DNA from: Macrostomum lignano
Taxonomy: Eukaryota
Reading direction: 5' to 3'
Length of the DNA stretch: 64,000 nucleotides
Assembly: GCA_002269645.1 (NCBI GenBank)
Contig: NIVC01000856.1
Span: 124,001-188,000 of the forward strand
Shown here: positions 13,843 to 63,001 of the stretch, one piece after another
How positions within the stretch are numbered: the first letter of the stretch is position 1
Layout: every line of letters starts with the position of its first letter
The notes under the pieces: model-generated
Seen by the model: the letters and a program-made list of their open reading frames with translations, nothing else
What the model was told of the DNA's origin: nothing
Database searches by the model: none
Translations under genes and position numbers: made by a program

Positions 13843-14804
13843 AGTTATCAGTGAATTTGTACCACTTATATAATTCAACACTCACACCAAGTCAGGTAGA
13901 GTAAAAAGTCACGCGAAGCAGTTATGACATAATCAATTTCTTAGGCAAGTCAGTACCAGTGTCTATGAAAGATAAGAAAGGAGCAAAAATAGTTCATGGA
14001 AAACAATAAAAAACACATTTTCTTAAACACTAATTCCTTCTTCACATTTTAAAAATCACCTTATTCGTGTAAAATTGTCACGGACTAAGATGTTTGCAAA
14101 ATTAAAAAATCACTTTTTCTCTAAAATTAACAAACAGTCAACAAAATATCGTTTCCCTAAATAGAAAATATTCCCAAGACAGCAAGCAACCCCCTCCAAA
14201 AGTGAACAATCGCAGATAGCAAGCATCCTCTAATGCTCATAGCAAGAATCACCACAGATAGCAAGCATCTGCAGATTAGCAAGCACCCCCCAGATATTAT
14301 AAAAGCATCCACCCAGATAGCAAGCATCCACTCAGATAGCAAGCATTTTGCAGATATCAAGCACCCCCAGATATTATAAAAGCATCCACCCAGATAGCAA
14401 GCATCCACTCAGATAGCAAGCATTTTGCAGATATCAAGCACCCCCAGATATTATAGAAGCATCCTGCAGATAGCAAGCACCCCCAGATATTATAGAAGCA
14501 TCCTGCAGATAGCAAGCATCCTGCAGATAGCAAGAATCCCTAAATAGCAAGCATCCTGCAGATAGCAAGAATCCCTGAATAGCAAGCATCCCTGGATAGA
14601 AAGAATCCCATGCATGTAGCCAGTACCCCTCTCCCAAATAGCAAGTATCCCCCTCGAGAGCAAGCATCCACGAGACAGCAAGTAGCTAGTGCAAATGTTA
14701 CTTCCGCTAATGCAATAATCGCTTTCTCAGGTTGTGCAACAATCCACGTCTCAGCGAGCGCAATAATCTCTTTTTTAGACAGCGCAGTAATCAGCTTCTC
14801 AGCT

Positions 14805-17112: not shown

Positions 17113-17183
17113 TCTAAGTGTTTTTATTTAGTCCTTTAATAAAACCTTTTAATAAAAAATTTTACACTACTACTTTTAAACTA

Positions 17184-17250
17184 CTTAGATTCGAACCTAG
17201 GTCGCTGCATTAGCAGTCTGGTCTGTTCAGCTCTAGGCTAGCTCTCATCG
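17184..17250 (-). mobile_element. tRNA-derived (SINE-like) head, copy 3
   Basis: Near-identical to copy 2; B box reads AGGTTCGAATC on - strand. Confidence 0.65.
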
Positions 17251-17699
17251 AAGTTATCAGTGATGTTGTACCACTTATATAATTCAACACTCACACCAAG
17301 TCAGGTAGAGTAAAAAGTCTCACGAAGCAGTTATGACATAATCAATTTCTTAGGCAAGTCAGTACCAGTGTCTATGAAAGTTTACAATATGGTTACGTAA
17401 TATAAATTCAGTACTGCGCTATGCTTTCACACTCAAAGCTGTGACGCAATTCAATTGAGTGTCAAATTCAGCCAGTACACAGACGATAAATAAAGTGTAT
17501 TGTGATGCAATCTATTTCAGAATCAGAATTCAACCAGTCAGTTTTTCTGCTAGCATTCTTACGATGCATTTCAAGTCGAAAGAGCTGCTTGACCTTTGCA
17601 AAAAAGCATGTTTTTCGAATATTTAATCCCTTTAGCATCAAGCAATTTCTTAGCCACGATGCATGTACTGTCACGGGAAAATTTCTGATCGAACAGTGC

Positions 17700-18134: not shown

Positions 18135-18895
18135 TAGCACCAGGGGCTTTAGCACCTGGGCTTTAGCACCAGGGCTTTAGCACCAGGGCTTTAGCACCAG
18201 GGCTTTAGCACCAGGGCTTTAGCACCAGGGGCTTTAGCACCTGAGTTTTAGCACCAGGGGCGCCAGCACCAGGGGCGCCAGCACCAGGGGCGCCAGCACC
18301 AGGGGCGCCAGCACCAGGGGCGCCAGCACCAGGGGCGCCAGCACCAGGGGCGCCAGCACCAGGGGCGCCAGCACCAGGGGCGCCAGCACCAGGGGCGCCA
18401 GCACCAGGGGCGCCAGCACCAGGGGCGCCAGCACCAGGGGCGCCAGCACCAGGGGCGCCAGCACCAGGGGCGCCAGCACCAGGGGCGCCAGCACCAGGGG
18501 CGCCAGCACCAGGGGCGCCAGCACCAGGGGCGCCAGCACCAGGGGCGCCAGCACCAGGGGCGCCAGCACCAGGGGCGCCAGCACCAGGGGCGCCAGCACC
18601 AGGGGCGCCAGCACCAGGGGCGCCAGCACCAGGGGCGCCAGCACCAGGGGCGCCAGCACCAGGGGCGCCAGCACCAGGGGCGCCAGCACCAGGGGCGCCA
18701 GCACCAGGGGCGCCAGCACCAGGGGCGCCAGCACCAGGGGCGCCAGCACCAGGGGCGCCAGCACCAGGGGCGCCAGCACCAGGGGCGCCAGCACCAGGGG
18801 CGCCAGGCGCCAGCACCAGGGGCGCCAGAACCAGGGGCGCCAGCACCGGGGCGCCAGCACCGGGGCGCCAGCACCGGGGCGCCAGCACCGGGGCG
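18135..18895. repeat. Minisatellite, 15-bp unit GCACCAGGGGCGCCA with 14-bp variants at both edges
   Basis: Central block 18250-18805 is essentially invariant; the GAPGA/LVLAP/WCWRP ORFs are artefacts. Confidence 0.95.
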
Positions 18896-22096: not shown

Positions 22097-22250
22097 AATG
22101 CCTGACAATGAGATAGTCAGGGCCTGACAATATGCCTGACAATGAGAGTCAGGGCCTGACAATATGCCTGACAATAAGATAGTCAGGGCCAGACAATATG
22201 CCTGATAAAAATGAGATAGTCAGGGCCTGACAATGAGATAGTCAGGGCCA
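22097..22250. repeat. Short tandem repeat of GAGATAGTCAGGGCCTGACAAT(ATGCCTGACAAT)
   Basis: About five copies. Confidence 0.8.
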
Positions 22251-22333
22251 CTATTTGAATCCTTTGTGTGTCTATGCATAGTATCCATGTGCATGCTAAA
22301 CTAACAGAAATCTCTCATCCCAATCCCGAGCAG

Positions 22334-22772
22334 TGCCTCCTGCTGGTTATAGGCCTGGTGGCCGCAGTGAACGAGCTGCAGCTCCAAGCCAATGCCACTT
22401 TGATGCAAAACGAAACCGCAGTTCAAAGAGTTCGGGCTGGCACGCTTGACTATGGTATAAACTGCTCCGTGTCTCGCTATATTATTTTCACCTCTGGCGA
22501 GAAACCCACTTTGGTTGCCTGGGAGGTGGCGCCAGATGATGGCGGCGTCGGCAGCGGCTCCTGCCACGTCTACCTGCCAGACAGAGCTGGCGCCAGCGAT
22601 CGGAACTGCGCCAGGATGTCAGAACAGTTGGGAATTCGACTGGGCGATGCTGATCGACCGGAGACCGGATTAAAGATTGGATTAGTGAATGCTAGTCACG
22701 GCGGTTGGTACAAGTGTCGAGTGTACATCGATAATCTGCTGTATATTGGCCACACCAGGCTGCTGGTTGAAG
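22334..22772 (+). CDS. RPTP exon: hydrophobic signal-like stretch and Ig-like domain
   Basis: [11 protein letters not shown]; [22 protein letters not shown]; donor AG|GTGAGT. 5' boundary uncertain. Confidence 0.75.
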
Positions 22773-25700
22773 GTGAGTGACGTTAATGGAGTGTGGTTTT
22801 AATTCGAGGTAGGACGGGATCCCCATTTCTAGATTCTATCCCAATTCCCAAAATCCTGGAATATCCAGTTTAATCCCAGTATCCGAATCCTGGGACCATG
22901 ATTCCAATCCCGATATCCCAAAATCCTGGGATTCCTATTCCAATCGCGAAATCCTGGGATTCCAATCCCAATATCCCAAATCCTGGGATTCCTATTCCAA
23001 TCCCAATATCCCAAATCCTGGGATTCCTATTCCAATCCCAATATCCCAAATCCTGGGATTCCTATTCCAATCCCAATATCCCAAATCCCGGGATTCCTAT
23101 TCCAATCGCGAAATCCTGGGATTCCAATTCCAATCTCAATATCTCGAAATCCCGGGATTCCTATTCTAATCCCGAATCCTGGGATTCCTATTCCAATCCC
23201 ATTATTTCAAAATCCCGGGATTCCTATTCCAATCCCAATATCCCAAATCTTGGATTCCGTTTCCAATGCCAATATCTCGAAATCCCGGGATTCCTATTCT
23301 AATCCCGAATCCTGGGATTCCTATTCCAATCCCAATATCTCAAAATCCCGTGATTCCTATTCCAATCCCAATATCCCAAATCTTGGGATTCCGTTTCCAA
23401 TGCCAATATCTCGAAATCCCGGGATTCCTATTCTAATCCCGAATCCTGGGATTCCTATTCCAATCCCAATATCTCAAAATCCCGTGATTCCTATTCCAAT
23501 CCCAATATCCCAAATCTTGGGATTCCTATTCCAATCCCAATATATCAAAATCCCGGGATTCCAATTCCAATCCCAATATCTCAAAATCCCGGGATTCCTA
23601 TTCCAATCGCGAAATCCCGGGATTCCAATTCCAATGCCAATATCTCGAAATCCCGGGATTCCTATTCTAATCCCAAATCCTGGGATTCCTATTCCAATCC
23701 CAAATCCTGGGATTCCTATTCCAATCCCAATATCCCAAAACCCTGTAGCTGTAATGAATTGAAGCTTTTATGAACTCAGTCACTAAAGTAGAAGGGCGCT
23801 CGCTACACTTTATTATCTTAGAAATAAGCTGGTGCATTTCGGAATCGATAGATAACGGAACGATTTCGCAGGTGCAGTATTCTAACTGAGTACATGTACT
23901 TTGATAATTCATCCGTCAATTTCAGACAAGCCGTCAGCTCCCACTGACCTTCGATTGACCCCGATTTCGTCGGATACCCTGGTTGCCAACTGGAGTCCTC
24001 CGGCTAGCAACGGTAATTTGCAGTTGCTGCGCTACGAGCTGAGTGGCTCCGGGCTCCGGCTGAACGGCAGCTCTAAGCTCAAGCTGCTGATCGGTAATCT
24101 CAGTCCGCACAAGGTCTACTGTCTGTCTGTTCTGGCTGTCAATGCAGCCGGCAGGGGCCCCTCAACTGAGTCCGTTTGCAACAGAACTTTAGAAGGCTCG
24201 CCTGAACCGGGCGCACTCAGAGTTGAGTTGCACTCTGTTAACGATACAATGGCGGTATTGCGCTTCCATATCGCCTTGGACAAGATGGCTGGACAGTTTA
24301 GACTGGTCAGACTGGAGCCGCGTCTGCTCTGGCATCTGGAGGCCCCCGGCCGTCTGTCGGCCGGTTCACAGGCGCAAAAAAATATTGTCATAGCGGCTGA
24401 AGAATTTAATAACAGTATCGTTACTGTAAGTATTTCTTTGTTTCATTTGATGTTCTGCCTAAATAGTTCTGTCCGATAATTGTCTCCGTCTACTGTCCGG
24501 AATTTCTACCGGTCTTTGTGTCCACCTTCTGTCCGGAATTACTTCCGGTCTTTGTGTCCGGCCTTTATACGGAATTACTTCCGGTCTTTGTGTCCACCTA
24601 CTGTCCGAAATTTCTTCCAGTCTTTGTGTCCACCTTCTGTCCGGAATTACTTCCGGTCTTTGTGTCCGCCTACTGTCCGGAATTACTTCCGGTCTTTGTG
24701 TCCACCTTCTGTCCGGAATTACTTCCGGTCTTTGTGTCCGCCTACTGTCCGGAATTACTTCCAGTCTTTGTGTCCACCTTCTGTCCGGAATTACTTCCGG
24801 TCTTTGTGTCCGCCTACTTTCCAGAATTACTTCCGGTCTTTGTGTCCGCCTACTTTCCAGAATTACTTCCGGTCTTTGTGTCCACCTTCTGTCCGGAATT
24901 ACTTCCGGTCTTTGTGTCCGCCTACTGTCCGGAATTACTTCCGGTCTTTGTGTCCGCCTACTTTCCAGAATTACTTCCGGTCTTTGTGTCCACCTTCTGT
25001 CCGGAATTACTTCCGGTCTTTGTGTCCGCCTACTGTCCGAAATTTCTTCCAGTACTTTCCGGAATATCGTCCCGTTCAAATGTCTAACTTGTGTCCGTAA
25101 ATTTTTCTAGGTCTTCGTACTATCGTCCATTAATTGAATACCACAGTTTCCGCTTTTAATTTTGTTCTTTCGCAAACTCGGTATACGGAAATCACGTCGA
25201 TTGTTTTTTTTCCACAGACCCGCGCCCTTACCGACCTGAAGCCGTACAGCCGCTACCGACTGTTATATTCAGTGTCCAACGGAGCTGAATCCGGCTCAGC
25301 CGGCTCGATCGACTTCAATACTACCGACGGACGTGAGTCAGTGCCATTCTTTGCTTTTTGGATTGTTGCCAGCAAAATTTGAGAAATTTCAACCACACTA
25401 TTTAAATCTGATCTATTTATTCGACCACAAACTTGGGAATCGTTTTAACCTCCGGCAACGAATCGCCCTCACCTCCCAAAGAGAATCGCCCTCACCTCCC
25501 AAAGAGAATCGCCCTCACCTCCCAAAGAGAATCGCCATCACCTCCCAAAGAGAATTGCCCTCACCTCCCAAAGAGAATCGCCCTCACCTCCCAAAGAGAA
25601 TCGCCCTCACCTCCCAAAGAGAATCGCCCTCACCTCCCAAAGAGAATCGCCCTCACCTCCCAAAGAGAATCGCCCTCACCTCCCAAAGAGAATCGCCCTC

Positions 25701-28700
25701 ACCTCCCAAAGAGAATCGCCCTCAACTCCGGCAAAGAATCGCCCTCACCTCCAATGAGAATCGCCCTCACTTCCCAAAGAGAATCGCCCTCACTTCCCAA
25801 AAGAGAATCGCCCTCAACTCCGGCAAAGAATCGCCCTCATCTCCAATGAGAATCGCCCTCACCTCCCAAAGAGAATCGCCCTCACCTCCCAAAGAGAATC
25901 GCCCTCACCTCCCAAAGAGAATCGCCCTCACCTCCCAAAGAGAATCGCCCTCACCTCCCAAAGAGAATCGCCCTCACCTCCCAAAGAGAATCGCCCTCAC
26001 CTCCCAAAGAGAATCGCCCTCACCTCCCAAAGAGAATCGCCCTCACCTCCCAAAGAGAATCGCCCTCACCTCCCAAAGAGAATCGCCCTCACCTCCCAAA
26101 GAGAATCGCCCTCACTTCCCAACGAGAATCGCCCTCACCTCCCAAAGAGAATCGCCCTCACTTCCCAAAGAGAATCGCCCCCACTTCCCAATGAGAATCG
26201 CCCTCACTTCCCAAAGAGAATCGCCCTCACCTCCCAAAGAGAATCGCCCTCACCGCCGCCACCCAGAGACTAAGCCAGAAGCAGTCAGGGTCAGCAGCAA
26301 GTCCCTCATCTTCTTACTCCCACAGTCGCGCCCGCGCCCACTCTGCTCCTCTATCAATTGTCGATCTTCGACGTGAACCTGACGGCCTCTTGCGCGCCAA
26401 AAGGCCGCGTCAACGGCCGCTTCAACGGCTACAGACTGTTCGTGTACCTGCAGAGCAACAAGTCCATAGTGTTCGAGCGCAACTTCGGTCCAGACGCTGT
26501 GAACCTGAGCGTCACCGGGCTGAAGCCGTACACCAGCTACTTGTTGAGTGCGGCCATCGTTACTACAAGGGTCGGAGAGGAATCCTCGCCAACGCCGGTG
26601 CTGACAGATCCGGGCGCCCCGACTGCGCCAATTAATTTCACTGCGTCACCGGCCAAGGCTCGCGCCGGCCTGCTACTGTCCTGGGATCATAAACCTGTGG
26701 GATTTCGCGACACCGCGGATGATAAAAGCTTCCCAATTTACATGCTGACCTACCGGGTCTACTGGCTGTTTGTTATTAATTCCGGCTTAGAGCTGCCACC
26801 GTCTTATTGGGATGTGCCGCTCACATTGGATCAGCTGTCTAACTGTGATTGCAAACTTGCCACTCATGTTAGCTGCCGGCCAACGACTGAGAGAATCTGC
26901 GTGAGTCCTTTCATAATCATACGAGCTAGATTTCATAATCATAAATTTCATAATCATAGATTTCATTATCATAGATTTCATTATCATAGATTTCATAATC
27001 ATAGATTTCATAATCATAGTTCATAGATTTCATTATCATAGATTTCATAATCATAGATTTCATAATCTCAGATTTCATAATCAAAGATTTCATAATCATA
27101 GATTTCATAATCATATATTTCATAATCTCAGATTTCATAATCAAAGATTTCATAATCATAGATTTCATAATCATAGATTTCATAATCGTGATTAAACCGG
27201 CATTAAACTGCCCCCTCTCCCGCCTGCAGCTGCTGCTGCCCCAACGTGAGCTGACCAGAAGCCTGTCACTCATAACGGACAAAATCGGACAATCGACTGT
27301 CGGTCTGTCTGACCAGCTGCGGATCCGCCTGTGGATTCAAGCCGTCGGCAAGTCCAGCTACGACACTGAGCATCGGCGCTATTTCGGCGACCGATCCGAG
27401 CCAGCAGACGCTTCGGTGTCGATCAGCGATTACGAAGCTGGCGGCCTCGGCCGAGCCTGGAGCAAATTTCCTGGCGGGAGAAGAAAGAATGGCGAATCGG
27501 CGACTGACAATGACGACTCAAATCTGTCGCCCGCCGTTGCTGTCGGCGTCGTTGTCGGTAGCATCGCGGCCGTGCTAGGCGTCGGCTTCATCTTGTTGCT
27601 GGGCTGGCGCTGGATCTTCGTCCGGCACAGGGGCTACCAGCGGCCGTTTAGCCAGGGCTTGGAGACTTTCGAGTGCCTCAGTGAGTGCATTTGCGAGTAT
27701 AATGTAAATTTGCGAGTAGATTAGGCCTCTGCTAATCACTTCCGGTCATTCTATTGATCATACTTTACCTCACTTCCAGGAATTATATTGATTATCTTTA
27801 AACTCACTTCCGGTCATTCTTTTGATCATCTTTGACCTCACTTCCGGTCATTATTTTGATCATCTTTGACCTCACTTCCGGTCATTATTTTGATCATCTT
27901 TTTACCTTACTTCCGGGCATTCTATTGATCATCACTTCCGGTCAATGTACTACTCATTATACGACACTTCCGGCTAGTTAATAGGCCATTCTATTCCCAC
28001 ATCCGGTCATTGGAATAATCGTTATATGACACTTCCGGTGAATATATAGGCCATTTCATTCCCACTTCCTTTCATTGGATCGATCATTATATGACTTGAG
28101 TTACTTAACTTAGCTTCAGGGGCTCCAGGCAGTCGGTTACAGCGGGGAGAAATCGTTGGCAATTTCTGCTCATCATAATTATCTTTATCAGATTCGTCCA
28201 TTTTTTTTATTTATAATTTTGCTCGTGTTTACTTTAAGTAGCAAGGTTCGCTTTCAACTCCTTTAACAGCCGCAGACAACGAGCAAGGCGGCCACAGCAG
28301 TCACAGCGCCGGCAGTTCTCGTGCGCAGTTAAAGCGCTACTCCCAGACAGAGCACAAGGCCATGTCCGTTGCCGAATTCCGCGATCACGTGATTGCCAGC
28401 CACGCAAACGATAATTCCGCTTTTCAACTCGAATTCGAAGAAATTCAACGAGTGACGCACAAGGATTGGCAGGCGTATCACGCCAAGCATCCTGATAACC
28501 TGTCGAAGAACCGTTACACTGACATCTGTCCTTGTGAGTATTGGCTTTAGTTGTGTCTCTGGAGTGAAGTGCTGTTGCATTGATGTCTATGGAGTGGAGT
28601 GTTGTTGCATTGGTGTCTCTGGAGTGAAGTGCTGTTGCATTGATGTCTATGGAGTGAAGTGCTGTTGCATTTGTGTCCCTAGGGTGAAGTGCTGTTGCAT

Positions 28701-29524
28701 TGGTGTCTATGGAGTGAAGTGCTGTTGAATTGGTGTCTATGGAGTGAAGTGCTGTTGAATTGGTGTCTATGGAGTGAAGTGCTGTTGAATTGGTGTCTAT
28801 GGAGTGAAGTGCTGTTGCATTGGTGTCTATGGAGTGAGGTGCCGTTGCATTGGTGTCTATGGAGTGAAGTGCTGTTGCATTGGTGTCTATGGAGTGAGGT
28901 GCCGTTGAATTAGTGTCTATGGAGTGAAGTGCTGTTGAATTGGTGTCTATGGAGTGAAGTGCTGTTGAATTGGTGTCTATGGAGTGAAGTGCTGTTGAAT
29001 TGGTGTCTATGGAGTGAAGTGCTGTTGAATTGGTGTCTATGGAGTGAAGTGCTGTTGCATTGGTGTCTATGGAGTGAAGTGCTGTTGCATTGGTGTCTAT
29101 AGAGTGAGGTGCTGTTTTCATTGTCTATATTGAAATGTCAAACATGTCGATCGCATCCCTAACACACACGCCTATAAATCAATCAACCCAGACGATCATA
29201 GTCGAGTTGTTCTGCTGTCAAACCCGGGCAAAAAAATGGGCGACTACATCAATGCTAACTATGTTGATGTAAGTAGTCACTTGCTATTTTTATCTGTCAC
29301 GAATTTTTCTTATTACTCCGTTTCCTAAGTCCATGTCCTACTCGAATCCAGGGCTACCGCCGGGACAAAGCTTACATCGCTTGTCAGGGTCCGGTGCCGT
29401 CCACCTTTGACGACTTCTGGCTAATGGTGTGGGAGAACCGCTGCACGGCTATCGTTATGATCTCCAACTTTGTGGAGCGGGGGCGGGTGAGTCACTGCTT
29501 GATGATTCAGGCACTGAGTAGATG

Positions 29525-29571
<47 letters not shown>

Positions 29572-29590
29572 GATAGATAGATAGATAGAC

Positions 29591-29640
<50 letters not shown>

Positions 29641-29649
29641 ATAGATAGG

Positions 29650-29708
<59 letters not shown>

Positions 29709-32700
29709 GTAGACAGAACGACAGACATTATATTCTGAATTGAAGGGAAGCAGTAGTCAGGAATATAACGCCAGACTTCCCTCGGCACTCCGCAGCGCAA
29801 ATGCGACCAGTATTGGCCCTCCAGCGGCAGCGAGGTGTACGGCGCCATCTCGGTGAAGCTGATCCGTCAGCTCAATAAGGCGGCCTACTGTATGCGGGAA
29901 TTTTCTATCAGAAATTTGCGCGCAAAAAAGCTGGCGAAAGAGCGCCAATTGTTCCATTTTCACTATTCTGAGTGGCCAGACTACGGCGTGCCGGCTTATC
30001 CGCTGCCCGTGCTCAACTTTGTACAGCGGACGGCCGCCTACTGCGGGGGCGACCAGTCCGGCCCGGTCGTGGTGCACTGCAGGTAAGCTCTTTTAATTAT
30101 AGTTTAGAAGTTATTAACCCCGAAGTAGCTAAATTTTAACCTGAGTCTGAGATTATTATAGGAAAGAGCTGAATTATCATCGGAAGTAGCAGGATTTTAA
30201 CCGAAAGCGGCTGGATGTTAACCGGAAGGGGCTGGATTTTCATCGGAAGTGGTTAAATTTTGACAGGAAGTAGCTGGATTTTAACTGGCAGTAGCTGGAT
30301 TTTAACCGGAAGTAGCTGGATTTTAACCGGAAGTAGCTGGATTTTAACCGGAAGTAGCTGGATTTAACCAAAAGTAGCTGGATTTTAACCGGAAGTAGCT
30401 GGATTTTAACCGGAAGTAGCTGGATTTTAACCGGAAGTAGCTGGATTTTAAATGAAAGGAGCTGGATTTGAACCGGAAGTAGCTGGATTTTAACCGGCAG
30501 TAGCTGGATTTTAACCAAAAGTAGCTGGATTTTAACCGGAAGTAGCTGTATTTTAACCAAAAGTAGCTGGATTTTAACCGGAAGTAGCTGGATTTTAAAC
30601 GAAAGGAGCTGGGTTTGAACCGGAAGTAGCTGGGTTTTAACTGGAAGTAGCTGGATTTTAAATAAAAGGAGCTGGATTTGAACCGGAAGTAGCTGGATTT
30701 TAACCGGCAGTAGCTGGATTTTAAACGAAAGGAGCTGGATTTGAACCGGAAGTAGCTGGATTTTAAATGAAAGGAGCTGGATTTGAACCGGAAGTAGCTG
30801 GATTTTAACCGGCAGTAGCTGGATTTTAAACGAAAGGAGCTGGATTTGAACCGGAATTAGCTGGGTTTTAACTGGAAGTAGCTGGATTTTAAATAAAAGG
30901 AGCTGGATTTTAACCGGCAGTAGCTGGATTTAAACGAAAGGAGCTGGATTTGAACCGGAAGTAGCTGGATTTTAACCGGCAGTAGCTGGATTTTGAACGA
31001 AAGGAGCTGGATTTGAACCGGAAGTAGCTGGATTTTAAATGAAAGGAGCTGGATTTTAACCGGAAGTAGCTGGATTTTAACCGGCAGTAGCTGGATTTTG
31101 AACGAAAGGAGCTGGGTTTAAACTGGAAGTAGCTCGATTTTAACCAGAAGTAGCTGGATTTGAACCGGAAGTAGCTGGATTTTTCCCGGAAGTAGCTCGA
31201 TTTTAACCAGAAGTAGCTGGATTTGAACCGGAAGTAGCTGGATTTTAACCGGAAGTAGCTGGATTTCATCCGGAAATGGCTCGATTTTTTACCAGAAGTT
31301 ACTTACAGGAATTGTATAAAGTATATATAGAAGTGTATTTAGAACCCAGCCTAAATTTAGTATCTATAAATTTATATCGAGTCTGAAGCCAATTCTCACA
31401 CAGTTATTTTCATTTTGTTACTTTGCCTACCCTCAGCGCCGGGGTTGGCCGCACTGGCACCTTCATCTGCATCGAGTCGCAGATTCGCCAAATCCTATGC
31501 GAGAAAACCATTAACGTGCGCGGCTTCCTTGAGCACATCCGGCAGCAGCGAATGCGCCTGGTGCAAACTGAGGAGCAGTACATCTTCATTCACGACGTAC
31601 TGCTGGAGTTCCTGCTCTGCCCTGAACGGGAGATCCCCATGGAACGGTTGCCGGATTATTTTAGCAACCTGATGGAGGAGACTGAGCCGTGCGGCTGCAC
31701 GGGATTGGAGACTCAATACCAGGTGCGAGACCGAGGCCTGAGAATTGTTTTTATTGATAGTAGTTTAAACAGTAATCCGGTTAAAAACGGTACCGTGACA
31801 AGAGTCGCTAAAAAGTCATTGCAAACAACTCACTAGTGACTCTTGCGACTCTTGTGAGTTTTTAACGACTCAAACGACTGGGGTCGTCTGGGGTCACTTC
31901 TTGTCTATTTTACCTGTTTTACCTGCAACCACTCTGGGGCGACACAGGTGACTCCAGGGACACACACTTCTTGGCCTGGGTACCGTTTTCATCTGGAATA
32001 TCGCAATGCCTTTTATAAAGACGCTGAGGGTCCAAATAGGCGCCTGAGTCAGACTTGAGAAGATTTTGCATCGTCAAAATCGTGGCATTCTGTTAGTGAA
32101 AATTAATTTAAAACATCTTTGCAAAAAATTTGCAGCTTTGCGTTGCGCATCAACCGGCTGATTACGAGTTGGCGTCGGCGCTGAAGGCGTGCAACTATGC
32201 CAAGAACCGGGCGGATGTGTATCCCAGTAAGTGGGGGGGGCGGCGTAGCCCAGTGGCGTTCTGGTGTGCCAGCGCCCCAGGCTCGATTCCAAGCGCAGTC
32301 GCATTAATTTTCTGGCTAAATTGGAATCTCGGCTTGGCTCTGCTCGTGCAATTAACGCCATTGAGTGAAGTGTACATGCCTTAAGATAAATAAAGTTAGG
32401 GCTGCTGTACACTCCTGTGTGACTGCTCAGGGGAGTCGGCGGAATGGGCCATTATGGGCAGCAATGCCTCTTACAGTTTAGTCCTTAGATGATAGGTCAA
32501 CTTATAAGCTCACACTGCACCGGACCAGTCTAACCTGTCTATCCATTTGTCCGCAGTTGAATCTCGTCGAGTCAAGCTGACCTGCAAGCCAGGAGTTGAT
32601 GGATCGGATTACATCAACGCGTCTCACGTTCACGTACGTACGAGTATCATTGATGATACCTATATGTAGCGATATTGATTGTAACAAGGCGCCAAGGGGG

Positions 32701-40399: not shown

Positions 40400-42493
<2,094 letters not shown>

Positions 42494-43298: not shown

Positions 43299-43624
43299 AT
43301 GGTCCCATCTGTTTTTAGCAACATTCCATGCGTTTAAAAGTGTTTGCTTTTCCACTAGTTTTCTGTTATTTGTTGTCACATTTTAACGACAGTATTTTAT
43401 TTATATTTACACAAGTTTCTATTTTGAACTAACATTTCCTTCCTTGTATCTGTACTTATTGAGTTGCACTAACTCTATTGTGCTAGTTACATTTATTCAC
43501 CCAAAAATACAATCTAACATCAAACAATAATTTTTCATGCGAGTCTTTTTGCAAGTTTGCTGTTCAATTTTCCGCTTTCTTTAAGGTTGTTGTCGATTTT
43601 TTTGTGCTGAGAGAAAAGTTATTC

Positions 43625-44145
43625 ATCACCATAGCCTACTCAGAACACCACTGCCTACTCAGAACATCGCTGCCTACTCAGAACATCACTGCCTACTCAG
43701 AACATCATTGCCTACTCAGAACATCACTGCCTACTCAGAACATCATTGCCTACTCAGAACATCACTGCCTACTCAGAACATCATTGCCTACTCAGAAAGA
43801 ACACCACTGCCTACTCAGAGCACCACTGCCTACTCAGAGCACCACTGCCTACTCAGAGCACCACTGCCTACTCAGAGCACCACTGCCTACTCAGAGCACC
43901 ACTGCCTACTCAGAGCACCACTGCCTACTCAGAGCACCACTGCCTACTCAGTGCACCACTGCCTACTCAGAGCACCACTGCCTACTCAGAGCACCACTGC
44001 CTACTCAGAGCACCACTGCCTACTCAGAGCACCACTGCCTACTCAGTGCACCACTGCCTACTCAGAGCACCACTGCCTACTCAGAGCACCACTGCCTACT
44101 CAGAGCATCACTGCCTACTCAGAGCACCACTGTCTACTCAAGCAG
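43625..44145. repeat. Minisatellite, 19-bp unit GCCTACTCAGAGCACCACT
   Basis: Tandem copies; a GAACATCACT/GAACATCATT variant block at the left end. Confidence 0.93.
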
Positions 44146-45479
44146 CACTTAAGTAGCAGTTTACATTGTACTTTAATCTGACATGTGACTAAGCGGAATA
44201 TAGTTCATTTCGATGCTTCAAATTTTAGTTTGAATCTCCACCACAGCCGCTGTTGCAGCTGAGGCCTCTCTCACTTAAAGCTGGCTGCATTTTGGCTACA
44301 GAATTTGCTACTACAACAAGCAACTTTTAAAGTTCCTATTTGAAATGAAACATTTTAGCGAAAAAATGTAGTTGTAAATTCCGTCTGACGCTTGGCGCTG
44401 CAATTTTTTTTAAGTTGCTTTTCGCTTTCACAGGGAGGGATCGGATGTTTGCTTCCCTCTAAGAATCCGTTGTGTAATAAAACGATATACAGCGATAAAA
44501 GTGCCCGAGTTCTAATCTAATACACTACACACAATATAAGTTTAGTGTATTGTATTGTAGTAATAAAATTCACGCCACTTGTGGTCGGACCGGACCGATT
44601 TAAGTGGAATTCCAATGCGACGCGTGGCGAAGGCTTCGGAGAATTTTACTAAGTACATTCATTGGTCGGGCGCTGCTAATGTACATAGGGGGCCGCGCCA
44701 CCAACCCCCCCCCCCCCATTTAATCCAGTGCACAACCCCCCGCGAAGGAATGAGAAGAATTTTCTCTGCCCCGCCACCCCACCCGACCGCTCGCTCACAC
44801 AGCTAACAACGCGCGCTCGCATTCTTTGCCCGAAAGAGCGAACTGCCAAAAAAGCTTTAATTGCGAAAACAACATTCCTGCGTGTATAAATGTATAATGT
44901 ATGCAATTCCTATCTGGCTGCTTCAAGAGGTCTTTAACCTTTCTAAACTATTTTCCTTTACTATGTAGTTTTATACAAACTCGCACTTTTGATTCTTCTA
45001 ATTAACTTGCGATAGCATGGGATGCATGTTCATTTGACGCGCGTGTACAGGTGTACTACTACGTGTACTTTAAATATGCTCAAATTCAAGAGTGCCTACT
45101 AATAAAGAGTAAAGACTTACTTAATCTACAACGTGGGGAAAACGATAAAAACTGACAACACTTAGTCACTAGTCACGTTAGACGTGATAATTTTGGTCAA
45201 GAAAAGTTAGGACGCATAGCAGATTCTAGCACACATTCGCCATTGTGTATAATACCTATATATTTGTAGAAATATTAATATATTAACACAAACAAGCACT
45301 TGTAGGCTTATTTTGCATTTTTGCGCAATAATAAAAAAGGCAACGAGATGGAAGCGGGGAACCTTTGGAGAAGAGAGGGTTAACAAAGCAAGCCAATGCG
45401 ACTGGTTTTAAGACAATTTTAACTGCCAAAAATACTGACTTGTTAAAATTGTCCTCAAGCCTGCAGACACTAAATACGA

Positions 45480-45977: not shown

Positions 45978-58185
<12,208 letters not shown>

Positions 58186-60845
58186 GCCGAATAGCTGGGG
58201 GTCACTAGCTGGGCTATTGCGTCAGGGTGGGCGGGGACTGCTGGGGGAGGGCACTACTACTGGTTAGATGAGTTCAAGCCACTTTGAAGAGTGAGCTGAA
58301 ATTCAAGGCAAAGTTCAATTTATGATGTAAATCTCTATCATGTCAGACATTTTGCTAAAAATTAACTAGTATCCATAAGTAGCTTATTTACTGCTAGATC
58401 CAATATAATTTTGCAGCATAACATAGTCAAAATATCTAATAAATAATTGAATATTTTAGCACAAGGAAACTGTGGCTTAACAAATAAAGTTAAGTAAGTT
58501 TTATAACTAGAATAGCCAATAAAATTATTATAATAAACACATATATTAAAACTTATCAAATAAACTTATCATTAAAGATGGAGTGAGTTTACCGTATGAA
58601 ATAGCCATAGCTTTGTAGGCATAATTTACTATGACTGAATATTATTGAATAGTAATACAGAAAATTAAATAAATCTTTTTAAATCTACCTCTTGTAGATA
58701 AATTATATTCTTAGTATTTTAAGTTTTTAAGACCTAAAAAAAGCTATAAAACAGTTGACAACATTTTCATCTTACCAATTCCAAACAAACAAGAATGTAT
58801 AACATTAAATAGTTCAGCAATAGATGTATTCTTATTCAATTTATTTGGAATATTTATCTGAACAATAATCTGTTTCTGTTACAGTCAATAGGCCCCACCC
58901 TCTGCATAGGAATAACAACTTAAAACTTATATCTTATGTGTTGGCATGTCTAGGAGGAGATATGTGTTAAACCCAGCCGGTCCACTCAGCTTTAGATATA
59001 GGATTATATTTCCGAACTAAGAGAGATGAATAAATAGCAATATTATTTACCATAATAAGTGCGTAGATGCATATTATTCGCAGAGACTTTTAATCCTAAA
59101 AATTGGGTAAAAATATTTTAAACTGTCAACAAGACACGTCTAGCACCGTTGTAATAGTTCAGGTTGTTAAAATATCGGCTAAGCTTGAGCATTAATAGCT
59201 AGTAGTTCGATCGATCTGCCTGCCGATCATAATTAAACAATCATAACCTTTACGTTTGAACTTATAGTACCACTCTTTGAGTTTAGTTAAACACAGTTTG
59301 CAACTTGAATCCTTATTAATGGCTTGAAAATATAAAAATAGTTACTAAGACTTGAATCTGCAACTATTTTTTGCAGTTGTGCTATATATTGCATATTATT
59401 TGTACAGGTTTGGTTGGTTCTTATTAACGTGTACGTGGTGCAATACATGTATGATACTTTCCGTGGGCAAGCGACAAAAAATAATTTTCGTCTAAAGTAG
59501 ACACTTAATTATATTGATAATTTCATGGTAGTTCGTATCATGCAGTTAAAACGAATGGGATTGGGATGAAAGATTACATGTACCATACAATACAAATGAT
59601 TTACATTTACATGTGTACATGTACATACGAAATCAGACCACGCAGCACACGCGTTTTAGCATGCAAGGCAGCATACAGTACATGATGTGCACAAGTACAA
59701 CAGTAGGTACAAACTCAAAGACTCAAAGTAACTGTTTAGGAGGCCATTTTCGTGGAAAAAATACACTGTGGAGATAGGAAAAAATCTTTTTTCATCACAA
59801 AATCAATGCGATTGCATTCGATCTGGGGCGGTGCAAAGATTACCATTTCTTAATTTAGCATCCACAACATGTTACTCTATTGTATTTTATATAGCTGTGT
59901 AGTGAACGTTTCATTTTCATATCGTTTTCTTTTTTTTCATATACATGTAATGTTCAAATGTTGAAGAGTTGCAAATGTTCACAAGTGAAGTTTTGTCTTG
60001 TCTTTCTTGAATCCACTATATTTGTAGTAAAATTGTTGCACCCAGGTACTCTTAAGCCACTATTGTAGGTATAGTTTCATCGAAAAGCAAATTTGTAGCT
60101 ACATGTACTCCTATACCGGCTGTCATATTGATAATAGTGCAGACAACAATGTTTAGCAATACGCTCGTATCATTTGAAATTTTTCATGTTGTTGATCTAG
60201 TCTTTAGAAAGCTATATCAATTTTTAAGCCAGCAAGCTTTAGCTTAAGACTATGTAAGATCGAGTACCTACATACATTCCAATTAATTTTATTACAATCT
60301 AAATACACTAAATCTCTAAGGTTTGTATGTTTGAACGTCCATAACGCTCTAGTTAATATACTACATGTACTTGATTCAAAAAAGAACAAGAAAATGCCAC
60401 ATTCATGCAGTAATTATACAAGCGTACATCTCCTTAAATTAGGGCGGAAGAAAATTCAGTACGCGTAAGAAGAGCGTCAACACTTAAAATACAATTTGTT
60501 GCGTTATTTCAACGGAGTTTACAAACATTCTTTTAATAGGGGTTTTACCATAGACAAATGCGATCGAAAAAAGAAGAAAACACTCAAGAGATAGGGACAG
60601 CTAAAAATTGCTGTGTGCCACCAGTGCTGCGGTAAAGTCTGACTCACGCAGTTCTCTCGGTGGGCAGCTATATTGCAATGTACAGATTGTGTACACAGCA
60701 CACTATACTCTACATGCATATGTAGAGCGCGAGAACCCAACAGGTGCAGCGCTGCAGTGTTCAGCCTATAAAATGTGGGACAGAATTGCTAGCGTTATAT
60801 ATTCCTAGCTTATAAATTGACAAAACACAATCAAACTGCCTCATC

Positions 60846-61505
60846 ATGCAAGCAACCTCGACAATAGACAAGCTGGGCTACCAGCTGCCACCTCGATCGA
60901 TTCCAGCTGCTCAGATGAGTCTTCAAGCCCGCGTTGACGAGGTGTTCGACCTGCTGGAGAGGTACGGCAGCGAGAACTACCTCGGCGAGGACATCTCCAA
61001 GTGCCAGCACGCAGTGCAGTGCGCCCTCATTGCCGAAGGTCTCAACCAGCCGAGCCACATCGTCCTTGGCGCCCTGCTGCACGACATCGGGCATCACCTG
61101 AGCGGCTTGGATCCCCAGGTGCCTCGCATGGTTACCGACGGCGTTGACTACGGCACGGTGGATCACGACATTCTGGGAGCTCGCTATCTGGAGTTGCTGC
61201 AGTTCCCGCCGGAAATTACCGCCTTCGTGCTGAATCATGTTCAGGCGAAGCGTTACCTGGTTGCTAAGCGGCCCGGATATCGGGAGCAGCTGTCGGAGGC
61301 GAGCAAGGCCACGCTGGAGCACCAGGGAGGCGCCATGAGCACCGCGGAGGCCGACCACTTCGAGAGCCTGCCAGATCACTGCGCCTATCTGGAGATGCGC
61401 ACCTGGGACGAGGCTGGCAAGGACCCGAGCGTGGACTACACAGTCGAGCTAGGACGGTTCAAACAGCTCTGCATGGATTACCTGGCTTCCAAGTCGCCAG
61501 CTTGA
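60846..61505 (+). CDS. phnZ: Intronless HD-domain diiron oxygenase, PhnZ/TmpB family (2-amino-1-hydroxyethylphosphonate dioxygenase-like)
   Basis: YLGEDISKCQH, ALLHDIGH, DHD..GA, NHVQAKRYL, LSEAS..TLEHQGG, RTWDEAGKD: the PhnZ iron-ligand pattern. AATAAA at 61566. Confidence 0.9.
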   Translation: MQATSTIDKLGYQLPPRSIPAAQMSLQARVDEVFDLLERYGSENYLGEDISKCQHAVQCALIAEGLNQPSHIVLGALLHDIGHHLSGLDPQVPRMVTDGVDYGTVDHDILGARYLELLQFPPEITAFVLNHVQAKRYLVAKRPGYREQLSEASKATLEHQGGAMSTAEADHFESLPDHCAYLEMRTWDEAGKDPSVDYTVELGRFKQLCMDYLASKSPA

Positions 61506-62029
61506 TAGGGGAATATGGAGGCACCGCGTTGGTTTAACTTGTTTTTTGTGCAACGTGTTCGAGTCAATAAATAATATATACTCTAACAGCTAGAGTTTCG
61601 GTATTCAAACTGTAACTCATAATCCTCTGCTATTACTCGTAGTACGTGTGGAACGTAGCAACTCAGGTACACAAAATTCAAGAAAAAAGACTAACTTTTT
61701 GTTTCGCACTTTCTCAAATAAGAGTCAATTGTCAACAGTCCTCTGGAAAGTCGAGATATTCGACGATTCTGCCAGAAGGTCGGATTTTTTTCATAATTGC
61801 GCTAGTGCATTCAGTACACCCCTGGGCGCCAATCAGCACTGCGCATCAGTTCAGCCTTGCAAAGCCTCCAAAGCCTCCATCAGCACGTCGACCACATGTG
61901 TCTGCATCAACTCTGACTTCGTTGGTCACTGGCCTTCACCCAGGCGGAGCTTCTGGACCTTCAACAGGTATGACCCCATGTGACTATGGACACTTATGGA
62001 CAGTTTCTCAAGCATTCAGTCGTCAGCAC

Positions 62030-62345
<316 letters not shown>

Positions 62346-63001
62346 ATACTTTGGCATTTTAGTATACTTATCGTAAATAGAAATAATAAAAATAAAATGT
62401 ATTGACGGATGCTGGACGGAGAAGGTCAAAGCAAGTTTAAATATGTGATACTTTCCTCTGAATTTTATTTCAACTTAAAGACAAAAGGCTGTTTTCCAAG
62501 AAGCGTCTAATAATTTTAATAATTTAAAAAGATGCAGCTCAGGTTCTAATTAGGTATATTGACGGTGAGCAGAACCAGAACCATGCGAATGGAGGCATTT
62601 AAACATTTCTAAAAAATTACAAGCAAAAAAGTATAAATGACCTAATAGTACAAAAAGTTGTTGAAAAAGTACAAAAAGCTGCTCAAGATGTTTGGAGTCC
62701 AGAAGGCCAGCTGGAAATATACTCGTATTTTTTTAGACTAAAAAATACAAAAGGTTGCTACCAATGCAATCCAGGCCACGTGAAATAAACAAATAGAAAA
62801 GTAAAATTCTAAGAAAAAATGAGATAGACAGAGAAACAAGACTGTTCGACGGAAGGTAAAAAGAAAAAAATCCGGAATGTTAGAATATAAGAAACCGCGT
62901 GTTAATACGCTCCTAATTGCGATAGTAAAACTGGCATCCGAAATTTATGAGCTCATAATATTTGTTTAAATGAACATGAACATCCAACCGAAAGGCAAGT
63001 A

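What the first reader, a model, noticed from the sequence alone, without database searches (positions are those of the whole stretch)
60846..61505. Intronless PhnZ/TmpB-type C-P bond-cleaving oxygenase in an animal chromosome
Seen: an intact 219-aa single-exon ORF with all PhnZ-type His/Asp iron ligands and the Y..E gate motif. It lies between two spliced animal genes, has a polyA signal, and has no PhnY/TmpA partner in the window. Known: bacterial PhnY+PhnZ convert 2-aminoethylphosphonate to glycine and phosphate, TmpA+TmpB convert the trimethyl analogue to glycine betaine, and many marine invertebrates make or eat aminophosphonates. Similar genes are, I believe, annotated in other marine invertebrates but are little characterised. 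Inference: an animal phosphonate-catabolic pathway, either ancient or horizontally acquired. The lack of introns fits HGT or retrocopy but proves neither.
Basis: partly seen in the sequence, partly recalled or inferred. Interest (0 to 1): 0.7.

Follow-up and report, generated by a model that had tools for sequence, protein, structure and literature searches.

The report
Intronless PhnZ-like oxygenase gene in flatworm
The flatworm Macrostomum lignano carries an intact, selectively maintained gene for a PhnZ-type iron enzyme that probably cuts carbon-phosphorus bonds. It belongs to an old, untested animal gene family that has introns elsewhere, so it is not a recent bacterial import.

Summary
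Window 60846-61505 (+) is an intact 219-codon ORF. Its product has all six PhnZ iron ligands, the YxxE gate and the PhnZ-type substrate-pocket residues. An AlphaFold model superposes on substrate-bound PhnZ (TM 0.91).

The window is Macrostomum lignano contig NIVC01000856.1. The gene lies between a spliced LIM gene and an ankyrin-repeat gene, has host-like GC3, and has a syntenic 97%-identical copy on a second contig. dN/dS is 0.06-0.23. It is therefore a real resident gene, not a contaminant.

The choice between "ancient" and "HGT" resolves towards ancient:
- Homologs occur in at least eight animal phyla.
- An octocoral, two molluscs and a hemichordate share two intron positions with identical phases.
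- Macrostomum shares a 4-residue insertion found only in animals.
- It scores 48 bits better against an animal-only HMM than against any bacterial group.

Its intronless state is therefore a secondary loss.

No 2OG hydroxylase partner is in the window. The 81 closest bacterial homologs also lack one; they sit in phosphonate clusters with PhnX-like, FAD-oxidase and AEP-transporter genes.

Most likely function: a stand-alone (R)-1-hydroxy-2-aminoethylphosphonate dioxygenase. This is inferred, not shown.

RefSeq already names such animal genes "PhnZ-like", but I found no paper that tests one.

The parts
60846..61505 (+). Single-exon CDS, 219 aa plus stop codon, of a PhnZ-like HD-domain oxygenase.
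   Evidence: An identical protein is annotated on M. lignano NIVC01000856.1.
60978..60989 (+). Codons Y45-L-G-E48, the YxxE substrate-gating loop (PhnZ Y24/E27).
   Evidence: Alignments. The role of the loop is taken from PMC8177086.
61080..61094 (+). Codons H79-D80-I-G-H83: the HD dyad (PhnZ H58/D59) and the His aligned with PhnZ H62.
   Evidence: These residues are invariant in all 126 sequences compared.
61131..61157 (+). Codons V96-T104 (VTDGVDYGT). They contain the 4-residue insertion found only in animals and are modelled as a beta-hairpin between the HD dyad and H107.
   Evidence: the insertion is present in Macrostomum and in 23 of the 25 other animal sequences (not in the two hexacorals), and absent from all 98 non-animal sequences; strands at 94-97 and 100-104.
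61058..61059 (+). Position equivalent to the conserved phase-0 intron of other animals (between H71 and I72). The sequence is continuous here.
   Evidence: Searches give the intron positions in Pecten, Lottia, Glandiceps and Paramuricea. One search gives the alignment.
61287..61289 (+). Codon Q148, equivalent to the conserved phase-1 intron of other animals. The sequence is continuous here.
61566..61571 (+). AATAAA polyadenylation signal, 61 nt after the stop codon.
   Evidence: The 3'UTR is conserved with the homeologous locus to about 45 nt past this signal, where homology breaks.
60607..60845 (+). Conserved 5' flank, the putative promoter and 5'UTR. It holds TATA-like motifs at 60767-60773 and 60811-60816.
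   Evidence: the two homeologous loci are 95% identical over this flank and identical over the last 70 nt before the ATG. Other long noncoding blocks are 87-94% identical. Promoter function is inferred only.

Best explanation
This is a genuine nuclear gene of the flatworm Macrostomum lignano, kept by selection. It encodes a PhnZ-type HD-domain mixed-valent diiron oxygenase.

Origin. The gene belongs to a clade present in at least eight animal phyla. That clade already had two introns in the cnidarian-bilaterian ancestor. The Macrostomum lineage lost both introns, either by retroposition or by cDNA-mediated intron loss; the data cannot tell which.

Likely mechanism, inferred from PhnZ:
1. Two irons are held by H55, H79/D80, H107, H131 and D188.
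2. In the resting enzyme Y45 caps Fe2.
3. An alpha-hydroxy-aminophosphonate binds Fe1 through its 1-hydroxyl and its phosphonate. E48 then swings in to hold the amine and releases Y45.
4. O2 binds Fe2. The resulting superoxo species abstracts the C1 hydrogen, and the C-P bond is cleaved to give phosphate plus glycine.

Substrate. The most likely substrate is (R)-1-hydroxy-2-aminoethylphosphonate or an N-methylated analogue, coming from the diet or from turnover of the animal's own phosphonolipids and phosphonoglycans.

Partner. Like its closest bacterial relatives, the gene is not encoded next to a 2OG hydroxylase. It probably works as a stand-alone scavenger of ready-made hydroxyphosphonate, or with an unlinked hydroxylase.

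Status of the claims:
- Shown: gene integrity, residency, selection, family membership, fold, the animal clade with shared introns, and the absence of a partner in the window.
- Inferred: cofactor, chemistry, substrate and physiological role.
For: Integrity and family:
- establish the intact ORF and the family matches.
- All ligands, the YxxE loop and K135, R136, S153, T156, Q160 and R185 are invariant.
- AlphaFold2 model: pLDDT 89, pTM 0.87.
- Foldseek places substrate-bound PhnZ 4n71 first (TM 0.91, rmsd 1.8 A) and TmpB next (0.80-0.84). The next hit after those is nine orders of magnitude worse in E-value.

Residency:
- The window is NIVC01000856.1, with LIM and ankyrin-repeat neighbours.
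- A second contig, NIVC01000019.1, is colinear over window 45.5-64 kb at 87-94% nt identity. It carries a 97%-identical copy next to the same LIM gene.
- ORF GC is 0.61 and GC3 is 0.76, like host exons. The flanks are 0.37-0.45.

Selection:
- dN/dS is 0.23 against the homeolog.
- dN/dS is 0.059 (dS 1.36) against a divergent copy on Logan contig L002. The constraint includes the N-terminal extension.

Ancient animal clade:
- Named homologs occur in Platyhelminthes, Mollusca, Brachiopoda, Crustacea, Echinodermata, Hemichordata and Cnidaria.
- Two intron positions with identical phases (0 and 1) are shared by Pecten, Lottia, Glandiceps and Paramuricea.
- The 4-residue insertion is shared by Macrostomum and 23 of the 25 other animal sequences, and is absent from all 98 non-animal sequences.
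- An HMM built from 25 other animals scores the protein at 248.6 bits. The best bacterial group scores 200.7, the PhnZ-like group 196.8 and the TmpB group 173.1.

PhnZ-type rather than TmpB-type: T156 and W187 match PhnZ, where the TmpB clade has S and L/Y/C.

Partner-less relatives:
- Neighbours in 81 bacterial loci are a PhnX-like HAD hydrolase (37 loci), DUF5690 (37), the TIGR03364 FAD oxidoreductase (17) and the phnS2 AEP-binding protein.
- None has a PhyH or TauD gene.

The mechanistic roles of the ligands and the YxxE loop are taken from PMC8177086.
Against: - No expression, protein or activity data were available.
- The protein falls below the curated equivalog cut-offs of all three NCBIfam models: 162 against 214.6 (TIGR03276), 133 against 300 (TmpB) and 97 against 300 (PhnZ1). 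Its exact substrate is therefore not settled.
- Animals carry H159 where PhnZ and the bacteria have Tyr or Phe. They also carry an extra hairpin near the active-site region. Either change could alter specificity.
- My neighbour-joining tree does not recover animal monophyly (8% bootstrap). It places the long Macrostomum branch beside the TmpB clade at 37%. Orthology therefore rests on the insertion, the HMM scores and the hit ranking, not on a resolved tree.
- I could not test whether M. lignano makes or meets hydroxy-aminophosphonates, or whether it has any hydroxylase elsewhere in the genome.
- A PhnZ-like HD enzyme that cleaves C-C instead of C-P is known (SmaX, PMC12186529). That enzyme lacks the second iron site, which is present here.
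Confidence: 0.65

Rival explanations
1. The gene was recently transferred from a bacterium into the Macrostomum lineage. Being intronless would then be the original bacterial state.
For: - The CDS is intronless.
- No other flatworm appears among the named homologs.
- The NJ tree does not recover animal monophyly, and Macrostomum sits on a long branch.
Against: - The ten best non-self hits are all animals, at 47-53% identity. Bacteria give 45% or less.
- The animal-only 4-residue insertion is present.
- The protein scores 48 bits better against an animal HMM built without Macrostomum.
- GC3 and codon composition match host exons.
- Other animals share ancient introns, so the family was already in the animal stem.
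Confidence: 0.05
2. The gene is a bacterial contaminant or a chimeric assembly join.
For: No reads could be inspected. The protein family is mostly bacterial.
Against: - Two separate contigs (395 kb and 1.57 Mb) carry the gene in the same LIM-gene context. Their noncoding flanks are 87-94% identical.
- The gene is embedded in AT-rich eukaryotic intergenic DNA with retrotransposons and minisatellites.
- It has a eukaryotic polyA signal.
- The protein carries the animal-only insertion.
Confidence: 0.02
3. The enzyme is a TmpB-type oxygenase acting on (R)-1-hydroxy-2-(trimethylammonio)ethylphosphonate and giving glycine betaine.
For: - The TmpB model matches at 9.6e-39 and 6npa at 3e-27.
- The NJ tree weakly joins Macrostomum to the TmpB clade (bootstrap 37).
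- From my own knowledge, trimethyl-AEP has been reported from sea anemones.
Against: - The protein scores lower against TmpB than against PhnZ by every measure: 133 against 162 bits, 99 against 112 bits, 173 against 197 bits with the group HMMs, and TM 0.80-0.84 against 0.91.
- At the discriminating columns it has T156 and W187, like PhnZ. The TmpB clade has S and L/Y/C.
- No TmpA-like (TauD) frame is in the window.
Confidence: 0.1
4. The protein keeps the PhnZ scaffold but acts on something other than an alpha-hydroxyphosphonate. It might carry out another four-electron C-C or C-X cleavage, or work as a hydrolase.
For: - HD oxygenases with other substrates exist: MIOX, and SmaX.
- The animal clade has its own changes, H159 and the extra hairpin.
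- It falls below all equivalog cut-offs.
- No phosphonate genes are nearby.
Against: - Every residue aligned with the PhnZ phosphonate and amine pocket and the YxxE gate is invariant across animals, PhnZ and the bacteria found in phosphonate clusters.
- The closest bacterial relatives sit in AEP-type phosphonate clusters.
- SmaX lacks the second iron site, which is intact here.
Confidence: 0.15

Closest known systems
PhnZ of uncultured marine bacterium HF130_AEPn_1, an (R)-2-amino-1-hydroxyethylphosphonate dioxygenase (PDB 4MLM, 4MLN, 4N6W, 4N71)
   Same: - It has the same HD fold (TM 0.91, rmsd 1.8 A).
- It has the same six iron ligands, YxxE gate and H62 equivalent.
- K108, S126, T129, Q133, R158 and W160 all have equivalents.
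- About 34-39% identity over about 170 residues.
   Different: - The host is an animal.
- There is no adjacent PhnY.
- There is a 24-residue N-terminal extension.
- A 4-residue insertion forms a hairpin between the HD dyad and the third His.
- His replaces Tyr132.
- The score is below the TIGR03276 cut-off.
Bacterial TIGR03276 'phosphonate degradation HD-domain oxygenase' of Bacteroidota (Chitinophagaceae, Algoriphagus) and Pseudomonas
   Same: - These are the closest non-animal relatives, at 39-47% identity.
- They have the same PhnZ-type pocket residues.
- They are likewise not encoded beside a PhyH or TauD hydroxylase.
   Different: - The bacterial genes sit in operons with a PhnX-like hydrolase, the TIGR03364 FAD oxidoreductase, a DUF5690 transporter or the phnS2 binding protein.
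- The animal gene stands alone between unrelated genes.
- The bacteria lack the animal insertion and have Tyr or Phe at the H159 position.
Metazoan '2-amino-1-hydroxyethylphosphonate dioxygenase (glycine-forming)-like' genes, the RefSeq name used for example in Pecten maximus, Glandiceps talaboti, Palaemon carinicauda and Lytechinus pictus
   Same: - They form the same clade, at 44-53% identity.
- Bilaterians and the octocoral Paramuricea share the insertion; the two hexacorals lack it.
- H159 is shared and invariant.
- All are single-domain proteins.
   Different: - Those genes have two or three introns at conserved positions. The Macrostomum gene has none.
- Macrostomum adds an N-terminal extension and sits on a long branch.
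TmpB of Leisingera caerulea (PDB 6NPA)
   Same: It belongs to the same family, with the same ligands and YxxE loop. Identity is about 36-44%.
   Different: TmpB has S, L and L at positions 156, 159 and 187 and is encoded directly after TmpA (compare). The query has T, H and W and no such neighbour.
PhoF of the fungus Fonsecaea multimorphosa, the only eukaryotic PhnY/PhnZ-type enzyme mentioned in the review PMC10574752
   Same: It is a eukaryotic representative of the oxidative C-P cleavage chemistry.
   Different: PhoF is a PhnY-PhnZ fusion.

Membership tests
[quoted passage not shown] | HD-domain all-helical fold superposable on PhnZ or TmpB | tested here: met
   Pfam HD scores 28.1 bits against a cut-off of 22. 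The AF2 model (pLDDT 89) matches 4n71 at TM 0.91 and 6npa at 0.80-0.84.
[quoted passage not shown] | Six-ligand motif H...HD...H...H...D for two irons (PMC8177086) | tested here: met
   H55, H79, D80, H107, H131 and D188 are aligned and invariant.
[quoted passage not shown] | YxxE substrate-gating loop (PMC8177086) | tested here: met
   Y45-L-G-E48 aligns with PhnZ Y24/E27 and TmpB Y30/E33.
[quoted passage not shown] | Fe(II)/Fe(III) cofactor and O2-dependent C-P cleavage of an alpha-hydroxyphosphonate | not testable with these tools
   This needs purified protein, EPR or Moessbauer spectroscopy, and a 31P-NMR or phosphate-release assay.
[quoted passage not shown] | Works in tandem with an Fe/2OG hydroxylase (PhnY, PhnY* or TmpA), usually encoded next to it | tested here: not met
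   None of 150 open frames of at least 70 aa in the 64-kb window has a PhyH, TauD or other 2OG-oxygenase domain. The rest of the genome was not searched. The 81 closest bacterial homologs also lack such a neighbour.
NCBIfam TIGR03276 (Phn-HD), NF049941 (TmpB) and NF052439 (PhnZ1) equivalogs | Score at or above the curated cut-off | tested here: not met
   Scores against cut-offs are 162.1 / 214.6, 133.1 / 300 and 96.8 / 300. Other animals score 188-193 on TIGR03276, also below the cut-off.
TmpB subtype (trimethyl substrate) | TmpB-clade residues at the columns that separate it from PhnZ (S156, L/V159, L/Y/C187 in window numbering), and an adjacent TmpA | tested here: not met
   The query has T156, H159 and W187. 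No TauD frame is in the window.
Metazoan PhnZ-like clade | 4-residue insertion (M-[VI]-T-x-G-x-x-x-G) between the HD dyad and the third His, and His at position 159 | tested here: met
   Both are present in Macrostomum. The insertion is in 23 of the 25 other animal sequences and in none of 98 non-animal sequences. H159 is invariant in animals.
Metazoan PhnZ-like clade | Conserved phase-0 and phase-1 introns | tested here: not met
   The CDS is continuous at both equivalent positions. I read this as secondary loss.
Metazoan PhnZ-like clade | Monophyly with other animals in a phylogeny | tested here: inconclusive
   NJ with bootstrap gives 8% support for animal monophyly, with Macrostomum on a long branch. 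HMM scoring favours the animals by 48 bits.
Horizontally acquired bacterial gene | Closest relatives are bacterial, composition is foreign, and the gene is absent from related animals | tested here: not met
   The closest relatives are animals. GC3 matches host exons. The family is present in at least eight animal phyla.
Processed retrocopy | Intronless copy with a polyA-tract remnant and target-site duplications, plus an intron-bearing parent elsewhere in the genome | tested here: inconclusive
   The gene is intronless. No flanking direct repeats above chance and no A-tract follow the polyA signal. No parent gene could be searched for. The event is old (dS 1.36 to the L002 copy), so any hallmarks would have decayed.

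The most novel reading that the evidence does not exclude
Animals have kept, by vertical descent since before the cnidarian-bilaterian split, a stand-alone C-P bond-cleaving diiron oxygenase. It lets them recover phosphate and glycine from hydroxy-aminophosphonates of dietary or endogenous origin, without a PhnY-type partner. If so, this would be the first phosphonate-catabolic enzyme of Metazoa. The intronless Macrostomum gene would give an easy entry point in an animal where RNAi and transgenesis work.
Probability: 0.45. Interest if true: 0.7.

Novelty: new member of a known kind. Interest (0 to 1): 0.5.

Why it matters
Many marine invertebrates store large amounts of 2-aminoethylphosphonate in lipids and glycans. 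No animal enzyme that breaks the C-P bond has been characterised. [quoted passage not shown]

This gene belongs to a widespread, intron-bearing and therefore truly animal family. The family keeps the complete PhnZ catalytic machinery.

If it is active, then:
- Phosphonate turnover in animals is host-encoded, not only microbial.
- Metagenomic and metatranscriptomic phnZ counts in animal-rich samples may include host genes.

Macrostomum lignano is a laboratory model in which RNAi and transgenesis are established, so the question can be tested directly.

Tried and rejected
1. A 'second paralog 9 kb upstream in the homeologous locus' was my own artefact. The BLAST database held both L001 and L002. 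The 86%-identical copy exists only on the 989-bp Logan contig L002, whose species and genomic position are unknown (corrected).

2. A neighbour-joining tree with 200 bootstraps (126 sequences, 186 columns) left the deep nodes unresolved. It pulled the long Macrostomum branch towards TmpB, so I rejected it as decisive evidence. I used the rare insertion, shared introns and group-HMM scores with leave-one-out controls instead. No maximum-likelihood tree software was available.

3. A genome-wide search for PhnY, TmpA, PbfA, PhnW, PhnX or PEP mutase in M. lignano was not feasible. The protein search lists only the best 120 hits, which would all be bacterial for a bacterial query. I had no animal query sequence. 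The third protein search was therefore left unused.

4. The primary PhnZ and TmpB papers (PMC3986159, PMC3839769, PMC6503667) are not held. Residue roles beyond the ligands and the YxxE loop rest on my own knowledge of those papers.

5. Literature searches for animal PhnZ found nothing relevant.

6. The loci around the homologs in Cafeteria, Pecten, Lottia, Glandiceps and Paramuricea have no 2OG-oxygenase neighbour.

7. Retrocopy hallmarks were looked for and not found.

8. No transcript evidence was available. Whether L002 comes from RNA or DNA could not be determined.
Full report
**1. Observation**

Window 60846-61505 (+) holds an uninterrupted ATG-to-TGA frame of 219 codons. Only ten open codons lie upstream of the ATG.

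The product matches the following:
- Pfam HD, above its gathering score.
- NCBIfam TIGR03276 'phosphonate degradation HD-domain oxygenase' at E = 9.5e-48.
- The TmpB model at 9.6e-39 and the PhnZ1 model at 1.1e-27.
- In the PDB, only PhnZ (4e-31) and TmpB (3e-27) match.

In the printed alignments the PhnZ numbering can be read directly. Y24, E27, H34, H58, D59, H62, H80, H104 and D161 correspond to Y45, E48, H55, H79, D80, H83, H107, H131 and D188. A 12-sequence alignment shows all of these as invariant, along with K135, R136, S153, Q160 and R185.

An AATAAA lies 61 nt after the stop codon.

**2. Where the window comes from, and whether the gene is resident**

The identical protein is annotated on Macrostomum lignano contig NIVC01000856.1 (395 kb, GCA_002269645.1). 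On one side is a 446-aa LIM-domain gene on the minus strand, whose first exon ends at window 58185. On the other side is a 1342-aa ankyrin-repeat gene on the minus strand, from about 63002.

A 97%-identical protein (P0001) lies on a second contig, NIVC01000019.1 (1.57 Mb), again beside a LIM gene. The two loci are colinear from window 45.5 kb to 64 kb at 87-94% nucleotide identity. The exception is a 5.7-kb non-LTR retrotransposon, present only in the window and inserted in a LIM-gene intron.

The ORF has GC 0.61 and GC3 0.76. This is like the neighbouring host exons (LIM 0.62/0.82) and unlike its AT-rich flanks (0.37-0.45).

The 250 nt upstream of the ATG, and the 3'UTR to about 45 nt beyond the polyA signal, are 95-100% identical between the two loci. 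Homology breaks after that point.

Contamination or a chimeric join is therefore very unlikely, although reads were not inspected.

**3. Selection**

- Against the homeolog there are 9 synonymous and 7 non-synonymous differences, giving dN/dS 0.23.
- Against a divergent copy on the 989-bp Logan contig L002 (86% amino-acid identity, dS 1.36), dN/dS is 0.059. The N-terminal extension specific to Macrostomum (residues 11-24) is equally constrained.

The gene is maintained as a coding gene and is probably translated from the first ATG.

**4. Ancient or acquired?**

The best non-self hits are all animals, at 47-53% identity. The best bacterial and metagenomic hits are 45% or less.

A profile of ten animal sequences retrieves named homologs from these groups:
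- Mollusca: many bivalves, Lottia and Patella.
- Brachiopoda: Lingula.
- Crustacea: decapods, krill and a barnacle.
- Echinodermata: Lytechinus.
- Hemichordata: Glandiceps.
- Cnidaria: Paramuricea, Oculina and Exaiptasia.

RefSeq calls many of them '2-amino-1-hydroxyethylphosphonate dioxygenase (glycine-forming)-like'.

I reconstructed exact exon-intron structures for four of them:
- Pecten, Lottia and Glandiceps have two introns. Paramuricea has three.
- All four share a phase-0 intron immediately before the 'V/I-x-L/V-G/A-A-L/F-L/F-H-D' segment.
- All four share a phase-1 intron in the codon before 'L-S/T-x-A-S'.

Identical positions and phases in a cnidarian, two molluscs and a deuterostome mean the gene already had introns in the cnidarian-bilaterian ancestor.

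A neighbour-joining tree was too poorly resolved to place Macrostomum. Animal monophyly had 8% bootstrap support, and the long Macrostomum branch sat beside TmpB at 37%. Two other lines of evidence do place it:
- A 4-residue insertion (M-V-T-D-G-V-D-Y-G against bacterial M-D-G-F-G) is shared by Macrostomum and 23 of the 25 other animal sequences. It is absent from all 98 non-animal sequences, including PhnZ, TmpB and the protist Cafeteria. Among animals only the two hexacorals lack it.
- An HMM built from the 25 other animals scores the Macrostomum protein at 248.6 bits. The Bacteroidota group gives 200.7, the PhnZ-like group 196.8, the TmpB group 173.1 and Pseudomonas 166.0. Leave-one-out controls with other animals show the same preference.

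The gene is thus a member of the animal clade, and its lack of introns is a secondary loss of both ancestral introns. No target-site duplication or A-tract remains. Retroposition and cDNA-mediated intron loss therefore cannot be told apart.

**5. What it most likely does**

The AlphaFold2 model (pLDDT 89, pTM 0.87) finds only PhnZ and TmpB in the PDB. Substrate-bound PhnZ comes first (TM 0.91, rmsd 1.8 A) and TmpB next (0.80-0.84). The next hit has an E-value nine orders of magnitude worse.

At the columns that separate the TmpB clade from PhnZ, the animal proteins follow PhnZ: T156 and W187, against S and L/Y/C in TmpB. Position 159 is an animal-specific invariant His, where PhnZ and the bacteria have Tyr or Phe and TmpB has Leu or Val. 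The animal insertion is modelled as a small beta-hairpin.

The published mechanism for PhnZ and TmpB runs as follows (PMC8177086):
1. The substrate chelates Fe1.
2. The Tyr of the YxxE loop leaves Fe2 when the Glu engages the amine.
3. O2 binds Fe2 and the C-P bond is cleaved oxidatively.

This mechanism can be transferred to the animal protein residue by residue. I therefore propose (R)-1-hydroxy-2-aminoethylphosphonate, or an N-methyl analogue, giving glycine (or its N-methyl form) plus phosphate. This is inference only. The protein scores below all three curated equivalog cut-offs, as do other animal members.

**6. The missing partner**

A Pfam scan of all 150 non-repetitive open frames of at least 70 aa in the window found the following and no PhyH, TauD or 2OG-oxygenase domain:
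- tyrosine-phosphatase and fn3 exons
- EF-hand
- LIM
- retrotransposon domains
- this HD domain

The loci in Pecten, Lottia, Glandiceps, Paramuricea and Cafeteria have no such neighbour either.

I fetched 80 loci with the closest bacterial homologs, plus one Algoriphagus locus. Their neighbours are:
- a PhnX-like HAD hydrolase, TIGR03351 (37 of 81 loci)
- a DUF5690 transporter (37)
- the TIGR03364 FAD-dependent oxidoreductase (17)
- alkaline-phosphatase-like proteins (16)
- SusD and TonB proteins
- in Pseudomonas, the phnS2 aminoethylphosphonate-binding protein

None has a PhyH or TauD gene. By contrast, a TmpB-clade member sits directly after a GBBH_N+TauD gene.

The branch nearest the animal clade therefore belongs to phosphonate catabolism but is not hard-wired to a hydroxylase. 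This makes a stand-alone role for the animal enzyme plausible. Such a role would act on ready-made hydroxy-aminophosphonate from food or from turnover of the animal's own phosphonates. Whether M. lignano has an unlinked hydroxylase or makes phosphonates could not be tested here.

**7. Comparison with what is known, and novelty**

Characterised members of this chemistry are bacterial PhnZ, PhnZ1 and TmpB, and the fungal fusion PhoF (PMC10574752). A related mono-iron enzyme, SmaX, cleaves C-C (PMC12186529).

I found no paper on an animal member. Automated RefSeq names already flag the animal genes as PhnZ-like.

The finding is therefore a new, intronless member of a known enzyme kind, inside an animal clade that is annotated but uncharacterised. 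What this analysis adds:
- The clade is ancient and vertically inherited.
- It has its own sequence signature.
- The Macrostomum gene is a derived intron-less form under purifying selection.
- Lack of a partner is shared with the closest bacterial branch.

**8. Verdict**

HGT and contamination are rejected with good confidence. The biochemical role is plausible but untested. Interest is moderate (0.5). It would rise if C-P cleavage by an animal enzyme were demonstrated.

Noticed in passing
window 49595-55316 (+): An intact-looking non-LTR retrotransposon sits in an intron of the LIM gene. ORF1 is 49975-51528. ORF2 is 51525-54422 and has endonuclease and reverse-transcriptase domains. An RNase H-like frame lies at 54254-55201. 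The element is absent from the homeologous locus L001, so it is a recent insertion.
   Followed up: partly
window 5400-8050 (-): Frame-shifted remnants of an LTR-type pol gene (RT, RT_RNaseH and integrase zinc-binding domains), split over several open frames.
   Followed up: no
window 22200-31900 (+) and 41500-42300 (+): Exons of a receptor-type protein tyrosine phosphatase with fibronectin-III domains, and a separate EF-hand gene. Both are ordinary animal genes that confirm the host context.
   Followed up: no
window 11800-17100, 18200-19020, 22900-26400, 28200-29100, 43600-44200, 48570-49630, 61980-62400: Numerous long minisatellite and microsatellite arrays give spurious long ORFs in several frames. 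The 18.2-19.0 kb array is 71% GC. Trinucleotide runs start only about 480 nt after the HD gene's stop codon.
   Followed up: no
L002 (Logan SRR28338165 contig, 989 bp), CDS 33-704: A second Macrostomum-type copy, 86% identical in amino acids and 80% in nucleotides, with dS 1.36. Its homology to the window is limited to the CDS. The species, the genomic position and whether it is RNA or DNA are unknown. It could be a paralog or an ortholog from a related species.
   Followed up: partly
L007-L087 (bacterial loci): The HD oxygenases closest to the animal clade recur in a cluster of the form TonB/SusD - alkaline-phosphatase-like - HD - PhnX-like HAD - DUF5690 (Bacteroidota), or phnS2 - TIGR03364 FAD oxidoreductase - HD (Pseudomonas). 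None has a 2OG hydroxylase. The substrate of the HD enzyme in these clusters appears to be undefined in the literature I could read.
   Followed up: partly
P0138 (Oculina) and P0142 (Exaiptasia) compared with P0008 (Paramuricea): The two hexacoral proteins lack the 4-residue insertion that the octocoral and all bilaterians have. This is either a secondary loss in Hexacorallia or a sign of a more complex history within Cnidaria.
   Followed up: no
L003 (Pecten maximus) 10001-12711 and 15890-17658: Pecten has two tandem copies of the gene about 3 kb apart (P0005 and P0123).
   Followed up: no
L089/L090 (Cafeteria roenbergensis) 10001-10825: The stramenopile Cafeteria also has a PhnZ-like gene. 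Its span is longer than its CDS, so it presumably has an intron. It is flanked by ordinary eukaryotic genes. The family is therefore not confined to animals and fungi among eukaryotes.
   Followed up: no
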